A DNA stretch of 64,000 nucleotides from Macrostomum hystrix (GCA_950097015.1 CATNEN010000029.1:3224001-3288000), one strand, 5' to 3'. Positions 23,680 to 61,898 are shown, counted from the stretch's first letter. Notes: generated by a model not told the origin, from the letters alone. Program-made: numbers and translations.

Positions 23680-24355
23680 CAGGGGTAGGCAAACTTATTT
23701 GCTGGCGGGCCAAAGAGAGAACCTAATAGACGACACCGGGCCGCATTGACTGTATAAATATGAGATAGGGGAGAGATGAGACACGCAAGAGATTTGACAC
23801 AGGAGAGATGAGACACGGGAGAGATGAGACACGGGATAGATGAGACACGGGAGAGATGAGACACGGGAGAGATGAGACACGGGAGAGATGAGACACGGGA
23901 GAGATGAGACACGGGAGAGATGAGACACGGGAGAGATGAGACACGGGAGAGATGAGACACAGGAGAGAAGAGACACGGGAGAGATGAGACACGGGAGAGA
24001 TTAGACACGGGAGAGATTAGACACAGAAAGATGATACACGAGAGAGATGAGACACGGGAGAGATAAGACAGGGGAGAGATTAGACACGGGAGAGATGAGA
24101 CACAGGAGAGATTAGACACGGGAGAGATGAAACACAGGAGACATTAGACACGGGAGAGATTAGACACGGGAGAGATGAGACACAGGAGAGATTAGACACG
24201 GGAGAGATGAAACACAGGAGAGATTAGACACGGGAGAGATTAGACACGAGAGAGATGAAACAGGACACTATAGATGTCAGAAGGTGCAACGGGCCGCGGA
24301 TTTGGGAGCTTCGAGGGCCGCATCTGGCCCGCGGGCCGGAGTTTGCCGACCCCTG
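23680..24355. mobile_element. Non-autonomous hAT (Charlie-like) MITE with internal 16-17 bp tandem array
   Basis: TIRs caggggtaggcaaact / agtttgccgacccctg (15 of 16 match), perfect 8-bp TSD ATCTATCA (23672-23679 and 24356-24363), subterminal gggccgc motifs, internal (gagagatgagacacgg)n. Confidence 0.9.
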
Positions 24356-42809: not shown

Positions 42810-45800
42810 CCCATACTGAACTAATGATGGATTAGTAGCCATAGCACTGAACTACTGATGGATTAGTAGCCATAGCACTGAACTACTGATGGATTAGTAG
42901 CCATCGCACTGAACTACTGATGGATTAGTAGCCATAGCACTGAACTACTGATGGATTAGTAGCCATAGCACTGAACTACTGATGGATTAGTAGCCATAGC
43001 ACTGAACTACTGATGGATTAGTAGCCATCGCACTGAACTACTAATGGATTAGTAGCCATCGCACTGAACTACTGATGGCTTAGTAGCCATAGCACTGAAC
43101 TACTGATGGCTTAGTAGCCATAGCACTGAACTACTAATGGATTAGTAGCCATCGCACTGAACTACTGATGGCTTAGTAGCCATCGCACTGAAGTACTGAT
43201 GGATTAGTAGCCATAGCACTGAAGTACTGATGGATTAGTAGCCATCGCACTGAACTACTGATGGCTTAGTAGCCATCGCACTGAAGTACTGATGGATTAG
43301 TAGCCATAGCACTGAAGTACTGATGGATTAGTAGTCATAGCACTGAAGTACTGATGGATTAGTAGCCATAGCACTGAAGTACTGATGGATTAGTAGCCAT
43401 AGCACTGAACTACTGATGGATTAGTAGCCATCGCACTGAAGTACTGATGGATTAGTAGTCATAGCACTGAAGTACTGATGGATTAGTAGGCATAGCACTG
43501 AACTACTGATGGCTTAGTAGCCATCGCACTGAAGTACTGATGGATTAGTAGCCATAGCACTGAAGTACTGATGGATTAGTAGCAATCGCACTGAAGTACT
43601 GATGGATTAGTAGCCATCGCACTGAAGTACTGATGGATTAGTAGCCATAGCACTGAAGTACTGATGGATTAGTAGCCATCGCACTGAAGTACTGATGGAT
43701 TAGTAGCCATCGCACTGAAGTACTGATGGATTAGTAGCCATAGCACTGAACTACTGATGGATTAGTAGCCATAGCACTGAAGTACTAATGGATTAGTAGC
43801 CATAGCACTGAAGTACTGATGGATTAGTAGCCATAGCACTGAAGTACTGATGGATTAGTAGCCATAGCACTGAACTACTGATGGATTAGTAGTCATAGCA
43901 CTGAAGTACGGATGGATTAGTAGCCATAGCACTGAACTACTGATGGATTAGTAGCCATAGCACTGAACTACTGATGGATTAGTAGCCATAGCACTGAACT
44001 ACTGATGGATTAGTAGGCATAGCACTGAACTACTGATGGATTAGTAGGCATAGCACTGAACTACTGATGGATTAGTAGGCATAGCACTGAACTACTGATG
44101 GATTAGTAGGCATAGCACTGAACTACTGATGGATTAGTAGGCATAGCACTGAAGTACTAATGGATTAGTAGCCATTGCACTGAAGTACTAATGGATTAGT
44201 AGCCATAGCACTGAAGTACTGATGGATTAGTAGCCATAGCACTGAAGTACGGATGGATTAGTAGCCATAGCACTGAACTACTGATGGATTAGTAGCCATA
44301 GCACTGAACTACTGATGGATTAGTAGCCATAGCACTGAACTACTGAAGGATTAGTAGCCATAGCACTGAACTAATGATGGATTAGTAGCCATAGCACTGA
44401 ACTAATGATGGATTAGTAGCCATAGCACTGAACTAATGATGACTACTGATGGATTAGTAGCCATAGCACTGAAGTACGGATGGATTAGTAGCCATAGCAC
44501 TGAACTACTGAAGGATTAGTAGCCATAGCACTGAACTAATGATGGATTAGTAGCCATAGCACTGAACTAATGATGACTACTGATGGATTAGTAGCCATCG
44601 CACTGAAGTACTGATGGATTAGTAGCCATAGCACTGAAGTACTGATGGATTAGTAGCCATCGCACTGAACTACTGATGGCTTAGTAGCCATCGCACTGAA
44701 GTACTGATGGATTAGTAGCCATAGCACTGAAGTACTGATGGATTAGTAGTCATAGCACTGAAGTACTGATGGATTAGTAGCCATAGCACTGAAGTACTGA
44801 TGGATTAGTAGCCATAGCACTGAAGTACTGATGGATTAGTAGCCATCGCACTGAAGTACTGATGGATTAGTAGTCATAGCACTGAAGTACTGATGGATTA
44901 GTAGGCATAGCACTGAACTACTGATGGCTTAGTAGCCATCGCACTGAAGTACTGATGGATTAGTAGCCATAGCACTGAAGTACTGATGGATTAGTAGCCA
45001 TCGCACTGAAGTACTGATGGCTTAGTAGCCATCGCACTGAAGTACTGATGGATTAGTAGCCATAGCACTGAAGTACTGATGGATTAGTAGCCATCGCACT
45101 GAAGTACTGATGGATTAGTAGCCATCGCACTGAAGTACTGATGGATTAGTAGCCATAGCACTGAACTACTGATGGATTAGTAGCCATAGCACTGAAGTAC
45201 TAATGGATTAGTAGCCATAGCACTGAAGTACTGATGGATTAGTAGCCATAGCACTGAAGTACTGATGGATTAGTAGCCATAGCACTGAACTACTGATGGA
45301 TTAGTAGTCATAGCACTGAAGTACGGATGGATTAGTAGCCATAGCACTGAACTACTGATGGATTAGTAGCCATAGCACTGAACTACTGATGGATTAGTAG
45401 CCATAGCACTGAACTACTGATGGATTAGTAGGCATAGCACTGAACTACTGATGGATTAGTAGGCATAGCACTGAACTACTGATGGATTAGTAGGCATAGC
45501 ACTGAACTACTGATGGATTAGTAGGCATAGCACTGAACTACTGATGGATTAGTAGCCATAGCACTGAAGTACTAATGGATTAGTAGCCATTGCACTGAAG
45601 TACTAATGGATTAGTAGCCATAGCACTGAAGTACTGATGGATTAGTAGCCATAGCACTGAAGTACGGATGGATTAGTAGCCATAGCACTGAACTACTGAT
45701 GGATTAGTAGCCATAGCACTGAACTACTGATGGATTAGTAGCCATAGCACTGAACTACTGAAGGATTAGTAGCCATAGCACTGAACTAATGATGGATTAG

Positions 45801-48800
45801 TAGCCATAGCACTGAACTAATGATGGATTAGTAGCCATAGCACTGAACTAATGATGACTACTGATGGATTAGTAGCCATAGCACTGAAGTACTGATGGAT
45901 TAGTAGTCATAGCACTGAAGTACGGATGGATTAGTAGCCATAGCACTAAACTACTGAAGGATTAGTAGCCATAGCACTGAACTAATGATGGATTAGTAGC
46001 CATAGCACTGAACTAATGATGACTACTGATGGATTAGTAGCCATCGCACTGAAGTACTGATGGATTAGTAGCCATAGCACTGAAGTACTGATGGATTAGT
46101 AGCCATCGCACTGAACTACTGATGGCTTAGTAGCCATCGCACTGAAGTACTGATGGATTAGTAGCCATAGCACTGAAGTACTGATGGATTAGTAGTCATA
46201 GCACTGAAGTACTGATGGATTAGTAGCCATAGCACTGAAGTACTGATGGATTAGTAGCCATAGCACTGAAGTACTGATGGATTAGTAGCCATCGCACTGA
46301 AGTACTGATGGATTAGTAGTCATAGCACTGAAGTACTGATGGATTAGTAGGCATAGCACTGAACTACTGATGGCTTAGTAGCCATCGCACTGAAGTACTG
46401 ATGGATTAGTAGCCATAGCACTGAAGTACTGATGGATAGTAGCCATCGCACTGAAGTACTGATGGCTTAGTAGCCATCGCACTGAAGTACTGATGGATTA
46501 GTAGCCATAGCACTGAAGTACTGATGGATTAGTAGCCATCGCACTGAAGTACTGATGGATTAGTAGGCATAGCACTGAAGCTACTGATGGATTAGTAGCA
46601 TAGCACTGAACTACTGATGGATTAGTAGCATAGCACTGAACTACTGATGGATTAGTAGCCATAGCACTGAAGTACTAATGGATTAGTAGCCATTGCACTG
46701 AAGTACTGATGGATTAGTAGCCATAGCACTGAAGTACTGATGGATTAGTAGCCATCGCACTGAAGTACGGATGGATTAGTAGCCATAGCACTGAACTACT
46801 GATGGATTAGTAGCCATAGCACTGAACTACTGAAGGATTAGTAGCCATAGCACTGAACTACTGAAGGATTAGTAGCCATAGCACTGAACTAATGATGGAT
46901 TAGTAGCCATAGCACTGAACTAATGATGACTACTGATGGATTAGTAGCCATAGCACTGAAGTACTGATGGATTAGTAGTCATAGCACTGAAGTACGGATG
47001 GATTAGTAGCCATAGCACTGAACTACTGAAGGATTAGTAGCCATAGCACTGAACTAATGATGGATTAGTAGCCATAGCACTGAACTAATGATGACTACTG
47101 ATGGATTAGTAGCCATAGCACTGAAGTACTGATGGATTAGTAGCCATAGCACTGAAGTACTGATGGATTAGTAGCCATAGCACTGAAGTACTAATGGATT
47201 AGTAGCCATAGCACTGAAGTACTGATGGATTAGTAGCCATAGCACTGAAGTACTGATGGATTAGTAGCCATAGCACTGAACTACTGATGGATTAGTAGTC
47301 CATAGCACTGAAGTACGGATGGATTAGTAGCCATAGCACTGAACTACTGATGGATTAGTAGCCATAGCACTGAAGTACTAATGGATTAGTAGCCATAGCA
47401 CTGAAGTACTGATGGATTAGTAGCCATAGCACTGAAGTACTGATGGATTAGTAGCCATAGCACTGAACTACTGATGGATTAGTAGTCATAGCACTGAAGT
47501 ACTAATGGATTAGTAGCCATAGCACTGAAGTACTGATGGATTAGTAGCCATAGCACTGAAGTACGGATGGATTAGTAGCCATAGCACTGAACTACTGATG
47601 GATTAGTAGCCATAGCACTGAACTACTGATGGATTAGTAGCCATAGCACTGAACTACTGAAGGATTAGTAGCCATAGCACTGAACTAATGATGGATTAGT
47701 AGCCATAGCACTGAACTAATGATGGATTAGTAGCCATAGCACTGAACTAATGATGACTACTGATGGATTAGTAGCCATAGCACTGAAGTACTGATGGATT
47801 AGTAGTCATAGCACTGAAGTACGGATGGATTAGCCTAAGATTAGCCATAGCACTGAACTAATGATGGATTAGTAGCCATAGCACTGAACTAATGATGACT
47901 ACTGATGGATTAGTAGCCATCGCACTGAAGTACTGATGGATTAGTAGCCATAGCACTGAAGTACTGATGGATTAGTAGCCATCGCACTGAACTACTGATG
48001 GCTTAGTAGCCATCGCACTGAAGTACTGATGGATTAGTAGCCATAGCACTGAAGTACTGATGGATTAGTAGTCATAGCACTGAAGTACTGATGGATTAGT
48101 AGCCATAGCACTGAAGTACTGATGGATTAGTAGCCATAGCACTGAAGTACTGATGGATTAGTAGCCATCGCACTGAAGTACTGATGGATTAGTAGTCATA
48201 GCACTGAAGTACTGATGGATTAGTAGGCATAGCACTGAACTACTGATGGCTTAGTAGCCATCGCACTGAAGTACTGATGGATTAGTAGCCATAGCACTGA
48301 AGTACTGATGGATTAGTAGCCATCGCACTGAAGTACTGATGGCTTAGTAGCCATCGCACTGAAGTACTGATGGATTAGTAGCCATAGCACTGAAGTACTG
48401 ATGGATTAGTAGCCATCGCACTGAAGTACTGATGGATTAGTAGCCATCGCACTGAAGTACTGATGGATTAGTAGCCATAGCACTGAACTACTGATGGATT
48501 AGTAGCCATAGCACTGAAGGTACTAATGGATTAGTAGCCATAGCACTGAAGTACTGATGGATTAGTAGCCATAGCACTGAAGTACTGATGGATTAGTAGC
48601 CATAGCACTGAACTACTGATGGATTAGTAGTCATAGCACTGAAGTACGGATGGATTAGTAGCCATAGCACTGAACTACTGATGGATTAGTAGCCATAGCA
48701 CTGAACTACTGATGGATTAGTAGCCATAGCACTGAACTACTGATGGATTAGTAGGCATAGCACTGAACTACTGAAGAATTAGTAGCCATAGCACTGAACT

Positions 48801-50770
48801 ACTGATGGATTAGTAGGCATAGCACTGAACTACTGATGGATTAGTAGGCATAGCACTGAACTACTGATGGATTAGTAGGCATAGCACTGAACTACTGATG
48901 GATTAGTAGGCATAGCACTGAAGTACTAATGGATTAGTAGCCATAGCACTGAAGTACTGATGGATTAGTAGCCATAGCACTGAAGTACTGATGGATTAGT
49001 AGCCATAGCACTGAACTACTGATGGATTAGTAGTCATAGCACTGAAGTACGGATGGATTAGTAGCCATAGCACTGAACTAATGATGGATTAGTAGCCATA
49101 GCACTGAACTACTGAAGGATTAGTAGCCATAGCACTGAACTAATGATGGATTAGTAGCCATAGCACTGAACTAATGATGACTACTGATGGATTAGTAGCC
49201 ATAGCACTGAAGTACTGATGGATTAGTAGTCATAGCACTGAAGTACGGATGGATTAGTAGCCATAGCACTGAACTACTGAAGGATTAGTAGCCATAGCAC
49301 TGAACTAATGATGGATTAGTAGCCATAGCACTGAACTAATGATGACTACTGATGGATTAGTAGCCATAGCACTGAAGTACTGATGGATTAGTAGCCATAG
49401 CACTGAAGTACTGATGGATTAGTAGCCATAGCACTGAAGTACTAATGGATTAGTAGCCATAGCACTGAAGTACTGATGGATTAGTAGCCATAGCACTGAA
49501 GTACTGATGGATTAGTAGCCATAGCACTGAACTACTGATGGATTAGTAGTCATAGCACTGAAGTACGGATGGATTAGTAGCCATAGCACTGAACTACTGA
49601 TGGATTAGTAGCCATAGCACTGAAGTACTAATGGATTAGTAGCCATAGCACTGAAGTACTGATGGATTAGTAGCCATAGCACTGAAGTACTGATGGATTA
49701 GTAGCCATAGCACTGAACTACTGATGGATTAGTAGTCATAGCACTGAAGTACGGATGGATTAGTAGCCATAGCTCTGAACTACTGATGGATTAGTAGCCA
49801 TAGCACTGAACTACTGATGGATTAGTAGCCATAGCACTGAACTACTGATGGATTAGTAGGCATAGCACTGAACTACTGAAGAATTAGTAGCCATAGCACT
49901 GAACTACTGATGGATTAGTAGGCATAGCACTGAACTACTGATGGATTAGTAGGCATAGCACTGAACTACTGATGGATTAGTAGGCATAGCACTGAACTAC
50001 TGATGGATTAGTAGCCATAGCACTGAAGTACTAATGGATTAGTAGCCATTGCACTGAAGTACTGATGGATTAGTAGCCATCGCACTGAAGTACTGATGGA
50101 TTAGTAGCCATAGCACTGAAGTACGGATGGATTAGTAGCCATAGCACTGAACTACTGATGGATTAGTAGCCATAGCACTGAACTACTGAAGGATTAGTAG
50201 CCATAGCACTGAACTACTGAAGGATTAGTAGCCATAGCACTGAACTAATGATGGATTAGTAGCCATAGCACTGAACTAATGATGACTACTGATGGATTAG
50301 TAGGCATAGCACTGAAGTACTGATGGATTAGTAGTCATAGCACTGAAGTACGGATGGATTAGTAGCCATAGCACTGAACTACTGAAGGATTAGTAGCCAT
50401 AGCACTGAACTAATGATGGATTAGTAGCCATAGCACTGAACTAATGATGACTACTGATGGATTAGTAGCCATAGCACTGAAGTACTGATGGATTAGTAGC
50501 CATAGCACTGAAGTACTGATGGATTAGTAGCCATAGCACTGAAGTACTGATGGATTAGTAGCCATAGCACTGAACTACTGATGGATTAGTAGCCATCGCA
50601 CTGAACTACTGATGGATTAGTAGCCATAGCACTGAAGTACTGATGGATTAGTAGCCATAGCACTGAAGTACTGTTCGATTAGTAGCCATAGCACTGAAGT
50701 ACTGATGGATTAGTAGCCATAGCACTGAAGTACTGATGGATTAGTAGCCATAGCACTGAAGTACTGAAGG
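42810..50770. repeat. ~8-kb satellite, 31-bp unit (ctactgatggattagtagccatagcactgaa), ~255 copies, inside a C2CD3 intron
   Basis: Directly visible; stops in all frames; recurrent variant positions and 41-bp variant units. Confidence 0.97.
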
Positions 50771-53624: not shown

Positions 53625-53828
53625 CACGAGGCCTCCCCAGCCTTTTCCACCGCGGCCGCCCCCGTTGACGCTGCCAAAGTGGCCGAAGCTCGTCAGCTTG
53701 TTGAGCGCGCCGAACAGCGCCGACGTCAACGCCAACCGCTGCTTGCGGCGCCAACCGCAGACAATGCAGAACGAGCCGCTTCGACTAGTCGTCTGGCCCG
53801 GGTGTTCAACTCCAAGTTTGCGCACTGA
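53625..53828 (+). CDS. C2CD3: C2CD3 terminal exon
   Basis: Acceptor cccgcAG|, phase 0; ends TSRLARVFNSKFAH*, similar to the vertebrate C-terminus xRIARIFS (from recall). Not in the ORF track. Confidence 0.78.
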   Translation, partial: HEASPAFSTAAAPVDAAKVAEARQLVERAEQRRRQRQPLLAAPTADNAERAASTSRLARVFNSKFAH

Positions 53829-54805: not shown

Positions 54806-55329
54806 CTCATAACCATAGCCATATCCCAATTTTAAGTATTTGATTGTTTCCAAGCGTACAAATTGTGTAAATCTAAGAGAGAATTTAACTTATCCGTTGC
54901 TAAAACTGATACCAAAGCCGTCCTGTATACGTACAACGTGTTTGTCTGCTATATTTTTCGTTAGCAAATTTGTCCAACAATTTATTGGTATACAATGGTG
55001 TTTTTTCATTTAAGGGTTAAACATTTTTTGTAAAATGTAAAATTTGTAAAATTACGAGTAGGTAGTTCAACTTGACATTCCTTCTACGTAATCTTAGCTA
55101 TATTATAAATATATTTTTCTAAATTCAGTTCTCATTTCCATAAAGCATCTAACATTCTCGATTGCGAGCACTGGTCCATCCAGTTTTTTGTTGTTTATTT
55201 TATGCTTTTTTAAGCGTATTTGTTATAATTCATTTTTAAATAAAATATAGATTGCAGCGAATCTAAACTGTTTCGCCTTTGAAAACCACTCTTAGATTTT
55301 TGCCCCTATTTTGCTATTTAGAACTACTT

Positions 55330-56578
55330 TTGCTTATCTCTCCCTTCTCATCCTTACCTCTCCCTTCTCATCCCTATCTCTCCCTTCTCGTCCTCAACTC
55401 CCTTCTCATCCTCATCTCCCTTCTCATCCTCATCTCTCCCTTCTCATTCTCAATTCCCTTCTCATCCTCATCTCCCTTCTCATCCTTACCTCTCCCTTCT
55501 CATCCCTATCTCTCCCTTCTCGTCCTCAACTCCCTTCTCATCCTCATCTCCCTTCTCATCCTCATCTCTCCCTTCTCATTCTCAATTCCCTTCTCATCCT
55601 CATCTCCCTTCTCATCCTTACCTCTCCCTTCTCATCCCTATCTCTCCCTTCTCATCCTTACCTCTCCCTTCTCATCCCTATCTCTCCCTTCTCATCCTTA
55701 CCTCTCCCTTCTCATCCCTATCTCTCCCTTCTCGTCCTCAACTCCCTTCTCATCCTCATCTCCCTTCTCATCCTCATCTCTCCCTTCTCATTCTCAATTC
55801 CCTTCTCATCCTCATCTCCCTTCTCATCCTTACCTCTCCCTTCTCATCCCTATCTCTCCCTTCTCATCCTTACCTCTCCCTTCTCATCCCTATCTCTCCC
55901 TTCTCGTCCTCAACTCCCTTCTCATCCTCATCTCCCTTCTCATCCTCATCTCTCCCTTCTCATTCTCAATTCCCTTCTCATCCTCATCTCCCTTCTCATC
56001 CTTATCTCCCTTCTCATCCTCAACTCCCTTCTCATCCTCATCTCCCTTCTCATCCTTATCTCCCTTCTCATCCTCATCTTTCCCATCTCATTTTTATCTC
56101 TCCCTCCTCATCCTCATCTCCCTTCTCATCCTCATCTCCCATCTCATCCTCAACTCCCATCTCATCCTCATCTCTCCCTTCTCATCCTCATCTCTCCATT
56201 CTCATCCTCAACTCTCTTCTCATCCTCATCTTTCCCATCTCATCCTCATCTCCCATCTCATCCTCAACTCTCTTCTCATCCTCATCTTTCCCATCTCATC
56301 CTCATCTCCCATCTCATCCTCATCTTTCCCATCTCATCCTCATCTCCCATCTCATCCTCAACTCTCTTCTCATCCTCATCTTTCCCATCTCATTTTTATC
56401 TCTCCCTTCTCATCCTTATCTCTCCCTTCTTCATCCTTATCTCTCCCTTCTCATCCTCACCTCTCACTTATCATCCTTAGCTCCCATCTCATCCTCATCT
56501 CTCCCTTGTCATCATTAACTCCCTTCTTATCCTCATCTCCCTTCTCATCCTCATCTCTCCCTTCTCATCCACATATCC
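55330..56578. repeat. Pyrimidine-strand satellite, 18-21 bp units (ctcccttctcatcctcatct)
   Basis: Reverse complement of the array at 57214-58962; ORFs 55279 and 55311 are artefacts of it. Confidence 0.92.
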
Positions 56579-56634
56579 CGTATTAGAACTACGGCTTAGA
56601 ACTTCACGCTAATCTCGCTTCAGCCTAGTGGAAT

Positions 56635-57117
56635 ATGTCCATAACAGCCAGCGACATCCGGCAGTACAGCTTCACCCGCCTGGGCGACATCAAAGGCGAA
56701 GCCGCCGGCCTAAACGTCATCGCCGTCATAGTTGACATTGTTCGTCAGCAGCGCTCGTCGCGCGGCTCGCATCGTGATCCTCTAACCCTAGTGGCGTTGG
56801 CCGACGAGACCAGGGACAGGGTCCTGGCGACAGTGTTCTGGTCCAAGCCGGACCAGATTCCGTCATTTCAGACTGGCTTCATTTTCATTGGTCATCGACT
56901 GAAATGCGAGCCGTTCAATGGAGAGATTCGCCTAGCTGTGCTGCCCAGGATTGGAGGCGCAATCTACCTGCTTCCCCCAGTAGCTGATGACCTCGGTGCT
57001 GGCCGGCCTGTTGAGTGCGATGACGGAGAATCGGAGCTAGCCAGATCGATCGTAGCCGACCGGAGACGTCTGCGACAAAGCGCGAGTGTCACAGACGCCG
57101 ATTTGGCTAGGGCAAGG
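56635..57117 (+). CDS. POT1: Protection of telomeres 1, OB1 exon
   Basis: YSFTRLGDIK...NVIAVIVD...LADET...VFWSKPDQIP...HRLK matches POT1 OB1; donor AGG|GTGCGT joins ELRVWF in phase 0. Confidence 0.85.
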
Positions 57118-57213
57118 GTGCGTAAGCCATCATTTACCTCGGCAGAAATCTCTGCCTACTTTTGTCAATGCCGCTTACGAAATATTACTTTGACTATATT
57201 ACTAACTTTCAAA

Positions 57214-58962
57214 TGAGAGATGAAGATGAGAAGGGAGAGATGAGGATGAGATTGGAGAGATGAGGATGAGAAGAGAGATTAGGATGAGATGGGAGAGATG
57301 AGGATGAGAAGAGAGAGATTAGGCTGAGTAGGGAGAGATGAGGATGAGATGGTAGATGAGGATGAGAAGAGAGAGATTAGGATGAGAAGGTAGATGAGGA
57401 TGAGAAGGGAGAGATGAGGATGAGATGGGAGAGATGAGGATGAGATGGGAGAAGTGAGGATGAGAATGGATAAATGAGGATGAGAAGGGAGAGATGAGGA
57501 TGAGAAGGGAGAGATGAGGATGAGAAGGGAGAGATGAGGATGAGAAGGGAGAGATGAGGATGAGAAGGGAGAGATGAGGATGAGAAGGGAGAGATGAGGA
57601 TGAGAAGAGAGAGATTAGGATGAGATGGGAGAGATGAGGATGAGAAGAGAGAGATTAGGTTGAGTAGGGAGAGATGAGGATGAGATGGTAGATGAGGATA
57701 AGAAGAGAGAGATTAGGATGAGAAGGTAGATGAGGATGAGAAGGGAGAGATGAGGATGAGATGGGAGAAGTGAGGATGAGAATGGATAAATGAGGATGAG
57801 AAGGGAGAGATGAGGATGAGAAGGGAGAGATGAGGATGAGAAGGGAGAGATGAGGATGAGATGGGAGAAGTGAGGATGAGAATGGATAAATGAGGATGAG
57901 AAGGGAGAGATGAGGATGAGAAGGGAGAGATGAGGATGAGAAGGGAGAGATGAGGATGAGAAGGGAGAGATGAGGATGAGAAGGGAGAGATGAGGATGAG
58001 ATGGGAGAAGTGAGGATGAGAATGGATAAATGAGGATGAGACGGGAGAGATAAGGATGAGAAGGGAGAGATGAGGATGAGAAGGGAGAGATGAGGATGAG
58101 AAGGGAGAGATGAGGATGAGAAGGGAGAGATGAGGATGAGATTGGAGAGATGAGGATGAGAAGAGAGAGATTAGGATGAGATGGGAGAGATGAGGATGAG
58201 AAGAGAGAGATTAGGTTGAGTAGGGAGAGATGAGGATGAGATGGTAGATGAGGATAAGAAGAGAGAGATTAGGATGAGAAGGGAGAGATGAGGATGAGAA
58301 GGGAGAGATGAGGATGAGATGGGAGAAGTGAGGATGAGAATGGATAAATGAGGATGAGAAGGGAGAGATGAGGATGAGAAGGGAGAGATGAGGATGAGAA
58401 GGGAGAGATGAGGATGAGAAGGGAGAGATGAGGATGAGAAGGGAGAGATGAGGATGAGATGGGAGAAGTGAGGATGAGAATGGATAAATGAGGATGAGAC
58501 GGGAGAGATGAGGATGAGAAGGGAGAGATGAGGATGAGAAGGGAGAGATGAGGATGAGAAGGGAGAGATGAGGATGAGAAGGGAGAGATGAGGATGAGAA
58601 GGGAGAGATGAGGATGAGAAGGGAGAGATAAGGATGAGATGGGAGAAGTGAGGATGAGAATGGATAAATGAGGATGAGAAGGGAGAGATGAGGATGAGAA
58701 GGGAGAGATGAGGATGAGAAGGGAGAGATGAGGATGAGAAGGGAGAGATGAGGATGAGAAGGGAGAGATGAGGATGAGATGGGAGAAGTGAGGATGAGAA
58801 TGGATAAATGAGGATGAGAAGGGAGAGATGAGGATGAGAAGGGAGAGATGAGGATGAGAAGGGAGAGATGAGGATGAGAAGGGAGAGATGAGGATGAGAA
58901 GGGAGAGATGAGGATGAGAAGGGAGAGATGAGGATGAGAAGGGAGAGATGGGGATGAGAAAA
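57214..58962. repeat. Purine-strand satellite, 20-bp unit (gagaagggagagatgaggat), POT1 intron 1
   Basis: ~85 copies with recurring variant blocks (gagaatggataaat, gggagaagtgagg). Confidence 0.95.
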
Positions 58963-59194
58963 GTTATGCCAATATTTGTTTATGCCACCAGACACCCTGA
59001 CTAGAACCGTTGAATATCTCTACGAGGCAGATGTTTAGTCATTTAAAACAGTTTCATCGTATAGAGCCGAAAATTATAGCAAGTGTTCTGCAATCTCATG
59101 GCGATCAGTTAAATATTTTGTGAGGTACTGAAAACGGTAAAAATGTTGGTATTTACATCCGAATGCAATCTACCTAATGCTGACAGGCGAGACG

Positions 59195-59340
59195 GTACAT
59201 TTGCGTGCGTACAGTATCTGTGCGCGTGTGTGCTCAGGAGTCAGCAGAATAGGCAGAATTGCCTCCTCGCTTACTGCGGGTCTAGTGTCACCAAATGATG
59301 TACCATTGCCCGCAGCCCTCCTGCAAATATGCTTATTATT
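59195..59340 (+). mobile_element. SINE family A, 3' fragment (a more degraded second fragment lies at ~59445-59540)
   Basis: gtgtgctcaggagtcagc...ggcagaattgcctcctcgc...caccaaatgatg...cccgcagccctcctgcaa. Confidence 0.75.
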
Positions 59341-59562
59341 AACAGAAACAATTACAAGGTACACTTTAGAGATGACCGAGTGAAGACAGCTAGTGTCCTG
59401 AGGTCAAAGTTAAAGTACATGGAATTTACATGACTATCATATCTATGTGTGCTCAGGGGTCAGCAGAATGAGCACGCAAATTCGCCTACTCAGCTGGCTG
59501 AGGAATTACTTTTGGCATCACCACCCGCAGCCCTATAGTTATTCTTTTTTTAAAATCCGCAG

Positions 59563-60338
59563 GAGCTTCGCGTCTGGTTTCAAACATCATTCAGACCGTC
59601 TTCTTCTGCTGCAACATCTGCTCAAACATCTGCTTCTGCTGCTCCTGCTGCTGCTCCTGCTAGCAATAGCGCCTGTCAGCGACTGTCTCTGTCTGATCTG
59701 TCCAAGCTGCAGTTTCAACGAGTTGGCAGCCGACGCTTCTTCGATCTGATGGCCCAGCTAGTCGCTGTGGGACCGATCGATGCCAAGTGCGCCCTGGCCA
59801 GGGTCTGGGATGGCACCGAACTGTCGGCCGTGACATTCAGCCCAAGCCAGGAGGCGGCTGCCAATCTGCAAATCAAAGAATGGTCGGAGCTGTCATCCGC
59901 ACAGCTGGCCGATCGCTATACTGTTGATATCTTTGTGTACGACGAGCATCGCGAGGCCCTACTATCTGGCAAGTTTCAGCTGGGCGATCTGATCGAATTC
60001 GGCAATCTGTCAGTCAAGTTATTCAACGTGCCGGATGGCGTCGGTGTCGGCAATGGCCGGCGAGAACAACTGCTGTTGTCAATGAACGGCGGCGGTCAGG
60101 CCTATAATAGGCGACTGTGTAGATTAGATCCGAAATATTGCAATCTGGCTGCTAAGCTCAGTGAGAAAATCGACTTTGTTAGGCGGTACAGGCTGCAACA
60201 GCCGGCAATACGGGTTACGACTGAGCCTGAAGCTGAGGCTTTGGCCACTACGACTATGGCAACTACGACGGAGCTGATGACCGTGGCAGACGAACGACTG
60301 GCCGATGTTGAACGGGTTAGCCTGGCCAATTTAATTAG
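59563..60338 (+). CDS. POT1: POT1 OB2 (POT1PC) exon
   Basis: FFDLMAQLV...ARVWDGT...TVDIFVYDEH...LSMNGGGQAYNRRLCRL parallels YFDLTCQL...KVWDGT...IDILVYDNH...LHGGTSYGRGIRVL. Confidence 0.9.
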
Positions 60339-60519
60339 GTCTGTCAAATTATATTTATACCCTCCTACTCGTTTGATTACTCATAGTAGCTAGGAAGGAT
60401 CGTAGGAAATAACTTTATACTTTGCTCGTGCAGATTAACTAATAGTAGACTATACCTAGCAATATTATGCAACTTTAATTGAGACCTCATTTTCATTAGT
60501 CTCACTAGAGAGAGACAGA

Positions 60520-61180
60520 CATGGGAGAGATAAGATAGTAAAAAGATAAGAGAGACATAATGTGTTCAGAGGGGATAGGACTATTGAGATATGAGATAGG
60601 GGAGAGAGGAGACAATGGGGGTGTGACACTAAGGATTTTAGACGCGGGAGAGATTAGACAGGGGAGGGATGAGACACTGGACAGAGATGAGACTCGGTAG
60701 AGATGAGACAGGGGAGGGATAGGATGGGAGAGATGAGACAGTAGAGAGATAAGACACTAGAGAGATGAGACACTAGAGAGATGAGACACTAGAGAGATGA
60801 GACACTAGAGAGATGAGACACTAGAGAGATGTGACAGGGGAGGGATGTGACAGGGGAGGGATGTGACAGTGGAGGGATGTGACAGGGGAGGGATGTGACA
60901 GGGGAGGGATGTGACAGGGGAGGGATGTGACGGGAGGGATGTGACAGGGGAGGGATGTGACAGGGGAGGGATGTAACAGGGGAGGGATGTGACAGTGCAG
61001 GGATGTGACAGGGGAGGGATGTGACAGTGGAGGTATGTGACACAGGAGAGATGAGACACTAGAGAGATGAGTCAGTGGAGGGATGTAACAGGGGAGGGAT
61101 GTGACAGGGGAGGGATGTAACAGGGGAGGGATGTGACAGTGGAGGGATGTGACACAGGAGAGATGAGACACGGGAGAGAC
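60520..61180. repeat. G-rich 16-17 bp minisatellite (gagagatgagacacta / caggggagggatgtga), POT1 intron 2
   Basis: Directly visible; related to the internal array of the hAT MITE at 23680. Confidence 0.88.
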
Positions 61181-61261
61181 GCTGGAGAGTTAGAAAGGCT
61201 TTATTGAAGTTGTTCAGGTTTCTCACGCGCCGCTTCGGAACCTTCTGTCAATATTATTCAG

Positions 61262-61898
61262 ATCCGCCACAGAATCCGAGGCCGGGCATCGAATAATCCG
61301 TGCCAACCTCGTCCGCCTCTTGCCTGCCACGGCTGATCGCCTGGTCTGGCTGCTCTGCGCCAACTGCGAATCCGCCTTCGGACCTGAGGAGCTCTCGATA
61401 CAATCCTACTCGGCTGAGAGCGACGAAGGCGAAGCTGAACAGCGTCGTAGGCCGAGACCGTTTGTCTGTCGGCGCTGTCGGCAGCATTCGGCTGCAACTG
61501 GCGAGCGTCCCCTCCGGCCTTCGCTGTGCATCGGCCTGCATCTGGCCGACTCAGATGCCGAACTGATGGCCTTCGCCTGGGACGCTGAAGCGCTTCGCCT
61601 GATAGACGATCGGCGCGGAGTTGACGACTTGGGCGACGATGTTGACGCGGCTCGTCTAGCCGCCGATGCGGAACTGAGGCGCCGAGTGTACTCAAAACTG
61701 CGAGAACGCCTGCCCACCGGTGCCAGAGTTGAGCTGTCCATTGTGCACTATCGCACTGCAGCTAGCGGCACGGTTGTGTACTCTATCTGCGACACTTTTA
61801 TCAGGTCTGAGGCTGACCTGGCTGCCGCTGCCGCTGCCGCTGCCTCGCTTATCGATGATTCTACTCGTAGCGATGACGAATCCGATGAGCTGGCGTGA
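61262..61898 (+). CDS. POT1: POT1 C-terminal OB exon with two CxxC motifs
   Basis: HRIIRANLVRLLP...CANC...CRRC...PLRPSLCIGLHLADSDAELMAFAWD...YSICDTF parallels YRIRAKL...CPKC...CKQC...[25 protein letters not shown]...YQIFDT; phase-2 join. Confidence 0.82.

What the first reader, a model, noticed from the sequence alone, without database searches (positions are those of the whole stretch)
55330..58962. First POT1 coding exon sits in the loop of a >1-kb inverted satellite pair
Seen: the array upstream (ctcccttctcatcctcatct)n, ~1.25 kb, is the reverse complement of the array downstream (agatgaggatgagaagggag)n, ~1.75 kb, with ~630 bp between them holding the ATG and the whole OB1 exon. An acceptor with a branch-like CTAAT (cacgctaatctcgcttcAG|, 56623) precedes the ATG, so both arms may be in the pre-mRNA. 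No other array in the window has an inverted partner. Established: inverted intronic repeats promote back-splicing, exon skipping and A-to-I editing, and polypurine/polypyrimidine tracts form triplexes. Inference: a fold-back could loop out the ssDNA-binding OB1 exon and regulate POT1, or this is a foldback-type element wrapped round the exon.
Basis: partly seen in the sequence, partly recalled or inferred. Interest (0 to 1): 0.75.

Follow-up and report, generated by a model that had tools for sequence, protein, structure and literature searches.

The report
Inverted minisatellite arrays flank POT1 exon
In the flatworm Macrostomum hystrix, the first coding exon of the telomere-protection gene POT1 lies between two kilobase-long arrays of one 18/20-bp repeat in opposite orientations. 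The layout is real and arose at this locus, but similar pairs recur in this repeat-crowded genome and nothing here shows that it regulates POT1.

Summary
Arm A (55335-56579, G-free on the + strand) and arm B (57213-58960, C-free) are reverse complements, about 85% identical over all of arm A. The 633 bp between them hold POT1 exon 1 (56635-57117).

The M. lignano POT1 orthologue confirms the start codon and both exon junctions. It also moves the start of exon 2 to 59563.

The genome is the published M. hystrix assembly. The repeat family occurs essentially only at this locus, so the arms share ancestry. Their unit variants and higher-order repeats differ, so this is not a mirror-image mis-assembly.

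It is not a foldback transposon. There is no duplication outside the arms, there are no other copies, and the loop holds a conserved host exon. The triplex case is weak.

The layout is not special to POT1. In 264 kb of surrounding sequence, 32% is minisatellite arrays. Close same-family pairs are inverted twice and direct two or three times.

Earlier notes of this scan list the same layout on other DNA of this genome, around an Ig exon, Lhx2/9, Sp and a UBL exon.

Arm B is intronic. Whether arm A is transcribed, as an outron or 5' intron, could not be tested. If it is, the arms would form a long duplex around exon 1.

Verdict: a locally born by-product of minisatellite proliferation; any regulatory role is unproven.

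The parts
55318..55327 (+). Left copy of a 10-bp direct repeat (TTAGAACTAC) flanking arm A
   Evidence: p is about 0.005 against shuffles. Such a match is rare among mismatched flanks of 111 arrays.
55335..56579 (.). Arm A: minisatellite array, C/T/A-only on the + strand (6 G, one AG). Units are mostly 18 nt, with some of 20 nt, and the outer part has a higher-order repeat of about 132 nt.
56583..56592 (+). Right copy of the 10-bp direct repeat flanking arm A
56609..56623 (+). Branch-like CTAAT followed by an acceptor-like CTTCAG|, 11 nt before the ATG. It is a candidate cis acceptor or spliced-leader (SL) trans-splice acceptor; its use is not shown.
   Evidence: The motif [T/C]TNCAG of M. lignano trans-splice acceptors comes from PMC8629364.
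56635..57117 (+). POT1 exon 1: 161 codons, phase 0, the OB1 domain
57118..59562 (+). Intron 1 (2445 nt), with donor GTGCGT and acceptor CCGCAG|. It holds arm B.
   Evidence: The orthologue junction LARVR|ELRRWF matches LARAR|ELRVWF here.
57213..58960 (.). Arm B: the same minisatellite in the opposite orientation, G/A/T-only on the + strand (3 C). Units are mostly 20 nt, with a higher-order repeat of about 140 nt and 8 donor-like GT[GA]AG sites.
59202..59342 (+). Copy of a ~130-bp dispersed repeat (SINE/MITE-like) in the tail of intron 1
   Evidence: at least 11 copies in 264 kb, on both strands
59563..60338 (+). POT1 exon 2: a low-complexity linker plus the OB2 (POT1PC) domain
60339..61261 (+). 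Intron 2. It holds another G-rich minisatellite (60640-61179) of a dispersed 16-mer family.
61262..61898 (+). POT1 exon 3: the C-terminal part, with CxxC...CxxC, and the stop codon

Best explanation
The two arms are descendants of one locus-specific 18/20-bp minisatellite. A short seed of the intron-1 array was probably copied in reverse orientation into the region just upstream of the POT1 start codon. The 10-bp direct repeat around arm A is compatible with an insertion. Each copy then expanded and homogenised on its own into a kilobase array.

This happened in a genome where minisatellite arrays fill introns and intergenic spacers. The short unique segments left between neighbouring arrays are therefore often exons, and related arrays end up side by side in either orientation. 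On this reading the POT1 layout is a by-product of that proliferation, not a device selected to control POT1.

Shown: the arms are real and homologous; the family is confined to this locus; the arms have evolved independently; arm B lies in intron 1; such pairs recur nearby. Inferred: how the duplication happened and that it is neutral.

A side effect is conditional on transcription of arm A. If transcription starts upstream of or within arm A (an outron of an SL trans-spliced mRNA, or a 5' intron), the G-free and C-free arms cannot fold on themselves and would pair with each other. That would enclose exon 1 in a loop and should favour some back-splicing or altered acceptor choice.
For: Homology of the arms.

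Family confined to the locus: a two-unit 40-mer with up to 3 mismatches matches 58 times in 220 Mb, all within window positions 56157-58962. For the 20-mer with up to 2 mismatches, 84 of the 100 listed matches lie in the two arms.

Independent evolution of the arms: only 2 of 37 exact unit types are shared, and the unit lengths and higher-order repeats differ.

Array-rich setting: 111 arrays make up 32% of 264 kb.

Close same-family pairs: inverted a19/a20 (L021:1151-1771 and 2198-2855, spacer 426 bp) and A/B; direct a42/a43 and a30/a32, and weakly a18/a19.

The 10-bp direct repeat around arm A.

Gene model and single copy.

Earlier scan notes list further inverted-array-around-exon cases in this genome. 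These are leads only.
Against: There are no RNA data, so a function cannot be excluded.

The sample for the orientation ratio is small: 5 close pairs in 264 kb of one chromosome region.

The second inverted pair also seems to bracket a short exon. This could hint at something more than chance.

The arms keep about 85% complementarity despite different unit variants. This could reflect constraint or gene conversion rather than youth.

The 10-bp flanking repeat is only marginally significant after multiple comparisons.
Confidence: 0.6

Rival explanations
1. RNA fold-back with a regulatory role. Arm A is transcribed as an outron or 5' intron, pairs with arm B in intron 1 and loops out exon 1. This would drive a circular exon-1 RNA, or shift spliced-leader addition away from the exon-1 acceptor, and so tune POT1 dosage or isoform.
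For: A 1500-nt construct folds with the arms paired almost end to end, at -875 kcal/mol.

The arms cannot self-pair because they are G-free and C-free.

An acceptor fitting the Macrostomum trans-splice motif lies 44 nt after arm A.

The exact 35-nt spliced leader is present at many places in this genome, and about 20% of M. hystrix genes are trans-spliced (PMC10468722).

Reverse-complementary intronic matches promote back-splicing and exon skipping in other animals (PMC8330042, title only, seen).

Adenosine-deaminase (A_deamin) genes exist in the genome.
Against: There is no evidence that arm A is transcribed; a start site within the 56 nt before the ATG is equally possible.

Such pairs occur in both orientations nearby.

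An earlier follow-up of a like case reported no conservation in a sister species (note s1-085019, not checked here).
Confidence: 0.22
2. A foldback-type transposon, whose inverted arms are made of tandem subrepeats, has wrapped round or captured the exon.
For: The arm architecture resembles foldback elements. Real Rehavkus/NOF-type foldback transposons are reported in this genome by earlier notes (not checked here).
Against: There is no direct repeat outside the two arms. No other copy of the family exists in 220 Mb. The loop is a conserved, single-copy host exon whose start and junction match M. lignano POT1. There is no transposase.
Confidence: 0.04
3. An assembly artefact: a chimeric fold-back long read or a mis-joined inversion.
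For: It is a long-read (canu) assembly of a repeat-rich genome (PMC10468722). Raw reads could not be inspected.
Against: The arms are not mirror images: their lengths, unit types and higher-order repeats differ. The unique loop is not palindromic and carries the exon in the correct orientation and phase relative to exons 2-3. A second such pair and further reported cases exist. The paper gives a Merqury quality value of 42.8 for M. hystrix and attributes the assembly's higher quality to a more strongly inbred line.
Confidence: 0.04
4. A DNA-level role. Arm A acts as a promoter-proximal C/T-rich element (a GAGA-type factor platform, nucleosome exclusion or H-DNA), and arm B as an R-loop-prone purine-rich intronic tract. 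Their inverted relation would be incidental.
For: Arm A ends 56 bp before the ATG. Each unit carries GAGAG-like motifs on one strand. Transcription of arm B would give a C-free, G-rich RNA.
Against: Pure purine or pyrimidine runs reach only 13-14 nt and the longest mirror repeat is 10 nt. Many unrelated arrays occupy similar positions in this genome. No factor or chromatin data are available.
Confidence: 0.1

Closest known systems
Reverse-complementary repeats in flanking introns (e.g. inverted Alu pairs) that promote exon circularisation and skipping
   Same: Two long complementary sequences bracket an exon that has an acceptor-like site upstream and a donor downstream. The predicted RNA duplex encloses the exon.
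   Different: The arms are locus-specific minisatellite arrays, not dispersed transposons. The exon is the first coding exon, so the upstream arm may lie outside the transcript. No circular RNA is shown.
Foldback transposons (Drosophila FB; Rehavkus/NOF types)
   Same: Long inverted arms built from short tandem subrepeats around a central segment.
   Different: There is no target-site duplication around the whole, no other copies and no transposase. The centre is a conserved host exon.
Other inverted minisatellite pairs in M. hystrix (L021:1151-2855, seen here; Ig-exon, Lhx2/9, Sp and UBL-exon cases in earlier scan notes)
   Same: Same architecture: kilobase or sub-kilobase arrays of one short unit in opposite orientation, with a spacer of a few hundred bp that often contains an exon.
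   Different: The unit sequences differ. The L021 family is dispersed over at least 140 kb, whereas the POT1 family is confined to its locus.
Purine-rich intronic repeat expansions such as (GAA)n in frataxin intron 1 (from general knowledge)
   Same: A purine-rich sense-strand tandem repeat of kilobase size sits in the first intron.
   Different: This is an imperfect 20-mer minisatellite with T interruptions. No evidence of transcriptional interference was found, and similar arrays are common in this genome's introns.

Membership tests
POT1 (protection of telomeres 1) | N-terminal OB1 domain (Pfam PF02765) | tested here: inconclusive
   Exon 1 scores E 0.049 and 13.9 bits, below the 29-bit cut-off. 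The M. lignano orthologue scores E 7e-4 and 19.8 bits. The ESM Atlas top cluster is POT1/CDC13 at 0.94 with 184 shared features. The AlphaFold single-sequence model was unusable, with pLDDT 39.5.
POT1 (protection of telomeres 1) | Second OB fold (POT1PC, PF16686) directly after OB1 | tested here: met
   Exon 2 scores E 4.3e-14 and 53 bits, above the 27.2-bit cut-off. It matches human POT1 residues 154-246 in the PDB at E 2e-5.
POT1 (protection of telomeres 1) | Binding of single-stranded telomeric DNA | not testable with these tools
   This needs biochemistry. Earlier notes say the genome uses TTAGGG-type telomeres (unchecked).
Foldback transposon | Target-site duplication flanking the whole element | tested here: not met
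   The outer flanks of A and B share no significant direct repeat (p 0.6).
Foldback transposon | Multiple copies of the family in the genome | tested here: not met
   The 40-mer matches only this locus in 220 Mb. The 20-mer is almost confined to it.
Foldback transposon | Long inverted arms made of tandem subrepeats | tested here: met
Circular-RNA-producing exon with complementary flanks | Complementary sequences in both flanking introns of one pre-mRNA | tested here: inconclusive
   Arm B is in intron 1. Arm A is upstream of the first coding exon, and whether it is transcribed is unknown.
Circular-RNA-producing exon with complementary flanks | Back-splice junction reads | not testable with these tools
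   No RNA-seq access.

The most novel reading that the evidence does not exclude
Arm A is part of the POT1 outron, and the kilobase A-B duplex hides exon 1 together with its acceptor. The spliced leader, which ends in ATG, would then sometimes be joined to the exon-2 acceptor (59562|59563). There its ATG is directly in frame, because exon 1 has 483 nt (phase 0), giving an OB1-less POT1. At the exon-1 acceptor the leader's ATG is out of frame and opens a 7-codon upstream ORF that overlaps the real start. Alternatively, exon 1 is released as a 494-nt circle. More broadly, inverted minisatellite pairs could be this flatworm's counterpart of Alu pairs in shaping splicing.
Probability: 0.05. Interest if true: 0.7.

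Novelty: new member of a known kind. Interest (0 to 1): 0.3.

Why it matters
If the arms were co-transcribed and acted on splicing, a telomere-protection gene would be tuned by a fast-evolving repeat. M. hystrix would then offer many natural cases of exons enclosed by kilobase RNA stems. As it stands, the value is descriptive. It documents how densely minisatellites populate Macrostomum genes and how locally born inverted arrays arise around exons. It also gives a checked three-exon model of M. hystrix POT1.

Tried and rejected

**Searches that gave nothing usable**
- The word search with the exon-1 ORF found nothing.
- The PDB sequence search gave nothing for exon 1 or exon 3.
- The AlphaFold single-sequence model of exon 1 was too poor to search with.
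- Rfam found no known RNA in the window.
- The supplements of the genome paper hold nothing on POT1 or minisatellites beyond a RepeatMasker table.

**Corrected along the way**
- My first exon-2 acceptor (59712) was wrong. The M. lignano orthologue moved it to 59562.

**Considered and rejected**
- Foldback transposon, mis-assembly and strong triplex or H-DNA potential: see the rivals.
- A DNA flip by recombination between the arms: the longest exact inverted match is only 44 nt.

**Left out or not weighted**
- A TATAAATA at 55104-55111 with an initiator-like motif lies upstream of arm A. It is at chance level in AT-rich DNA and was given no weight.
- The joined (spliced) protein was not built or searched.
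- The contig is not human.

Full report
**What is there.** The window lies at C29:3224001-3288000 of a 220,453,370-bp assembly in 42 contigs. These figures equal Table 1 for Macrostomum hystrix in PMC10468722. The 35-nt Macrostomum spliced leader taken from PMC8629364 occurs exactly at more than 20 places in the genome. It is a flatworm contig, not a human one.

**The arrays.** Tandem Repeats Finder gives array A at 55335-56579 and array B at 57213-58960. They are reverse complements:
- 1342 inverted pairs, with arms up to 198 nt at 82% and 138 nt at 91%.
- A gapped alignment of all of A to the reverse complement of B at 85%.
- Arm A has 6 G and a single AG in 1245 nt. Arm B has 3 C in 1748 nt.

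**The gene.**
- Exon 1 is 56635-57117. An in-frame TAG lies just before the ATG and the donor is GTGCGT.
- The only relative of exon 1 among 1.84 billion representative proteins is a 622-aa M. lignano protein annotated as POT1PC-containing. It aligns from its first residue to residue 159 over exon 1.
- Its next residues (ELRRWF) match ELRVWF at 59563. This fixes exon 2 as 59563-60338 and corrects my first guess of 59713.
- Exon 3 is 61262-61898.
- Exon 2 is a clear POT1 OB2 domain (Pfam E 4e-14; human POT1 structures at E 2e-5).
- Exon 1 is OB1 by position, by weak Pfam hits (E 0.049 here, 7e-4 in the orthologue) and by ESM Atlas similarity. A single-sequence structure model was unusable.
- The gene is single-copy.
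- The joined protein was not built; exons were handled separately.

**Origin of the arms.**
- A two-unit 40-mer with up to 3 mismatches matches 58 times in the genome, all inside the two arms. The 20-mer with up to 2 mismatches is almost confined to them. The arms therefore share ancestry and were born at this locus.
- They are not mirror images. Arm A is mostly 18-nt units with a higher-order repeat of about 132 nt. Arm B is mostly 20-nt units with a higher-order repeat of about 140 nt. Only 2 of 37 exact unit types are shared. This argues against a fold-back read artefact and for independent expansion after an old inverted copy.
- A 10-bp direct repeat, TTAGAACTAC, flanks arm A alone, at 55318-27 and 56583-92. 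This is compatible with insertion of a seed at that site. Nothing comparable flanks the pair as a whole.

**Is it special?**
- Within the window no other array has an inverted partner.
- I added the 200 kb upstream. In the resulting 264 kb, 111 arrays of at least 150 bp make up 32% of the sequence.
- Among neighbouring arrays of one family less than 2 kb apart, two pairs are inverted: A/B, and a 24-mer pair at L021:1151-1771 and 2198-2855. Two to three pairs are direct.
- The spacer of the second inverted pair holds a plausible 95-nt exon inside a cGMP-dependent-kinase-like gene. This exon is unverified.
- Earlier notes of this scan list further inverted-array-around-exon cases in the same genome, one of them followed up with a similar verdict. 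I used these as leads only.
- Arrays fill introns and spacers, so the unique DNA between neighbouring arrays is often an exon, and orientation looks arbitrary.

**Consequences.**
- Arm B is in intron 1. Arm A ends 44 nt before an acceptor-like CTTCAG| (56623) that fits the trans-splice acceptor motif of M. lignano, and 56 nt before the ATG. Whether transcription starts upstream of arm A cannot be told without RNA data.
- If it does, the arms pair nearly end to end. A 1500-nt construct folds at -875 kcal/mol.
- Triplex or H-DNA potential is weak.
- Recombination between the arms is unlikely: the longest exact match is 44 nt.
- Deaminase-domain genes exist in the genome.

**Limits.** Cross-species comparison and a genome-wide census were therefore not done.

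**Verdict.** The structure is real, striking and locally born. It is best read as a by-product of minisatellite proliferation (0.6). A regulatory RNA fold-back remains possible (about 0.2). A foldback transposon or a mis-assembly is unlikely.

Noticed in passing
L021:1151-1771 and L021:2198-2855 (C29:3075151-3076855): A second inverted minisatellite pair: 24-mer units and a 426-bp spacer with a plausible 95-nt exon at L021:1811-1905. It lies inside a + strand cGMP-dependent-kinase-like gene. Its family also occurs as direct and inverted arrays over at least 140 kb.
   Followed up: partly
window 42815-50767: An 8-kb array of a 31-bp unit (252 copies, 92% matches). It is the largest array in the window.
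   Followed up: no
window 23760-24262 and 60640-61179; also C29 3071231, 3195553 and 3214066 (positions 47231, 171553 and 190066 in the 264-kb sample): A 16-mer G-rich minisatellite family (core GAGAGATGAGACAC). Five arrays are spread over 214 kb, all in the same orientation. One of them sits in POT1 intron 2.
   Followed up: partly
window 59202-59342: A ~130-bp dispersed repeat (SINE/MITE-like) in POT1 intron 1, with at least 11 copies on both strands in 264 kb. A partial local duplicate lies near 59447.
   Followed up: partly
window 55318-55327 and 56583-56592: A 10-bp direct repeat, TTAGAACTAC, brackets arm A only. A third TTAGAACT follows at 56596. This may be the footprint of an insertion that seeded arm A.
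   Followed up: partly
window 53625-53828: Probably the last coding exon of the upstream + strand gene, with its stop at 53826-53828. About 2.8 kb separate this stop from the POT1 acceptor (56623), of which about 1.5 kb is arrays. This is near the repeat-adjusted distance used to call operons in M. lignano.
   Followed up: no
window 61350-61480: POT1 exon 3 carries CxxC ... CxxC, conserved in M. lignano. This is possibly the zinc site of the C-terminal OB3 region.
   Followed up: no
whole-library search: Exon 1 (OB1) has a single detectable relative, M. lignano, among 1.84 billion representative proteins. The first OB fold of Macrostomum POT1 is therefore very divergent.
   Followed up: partly
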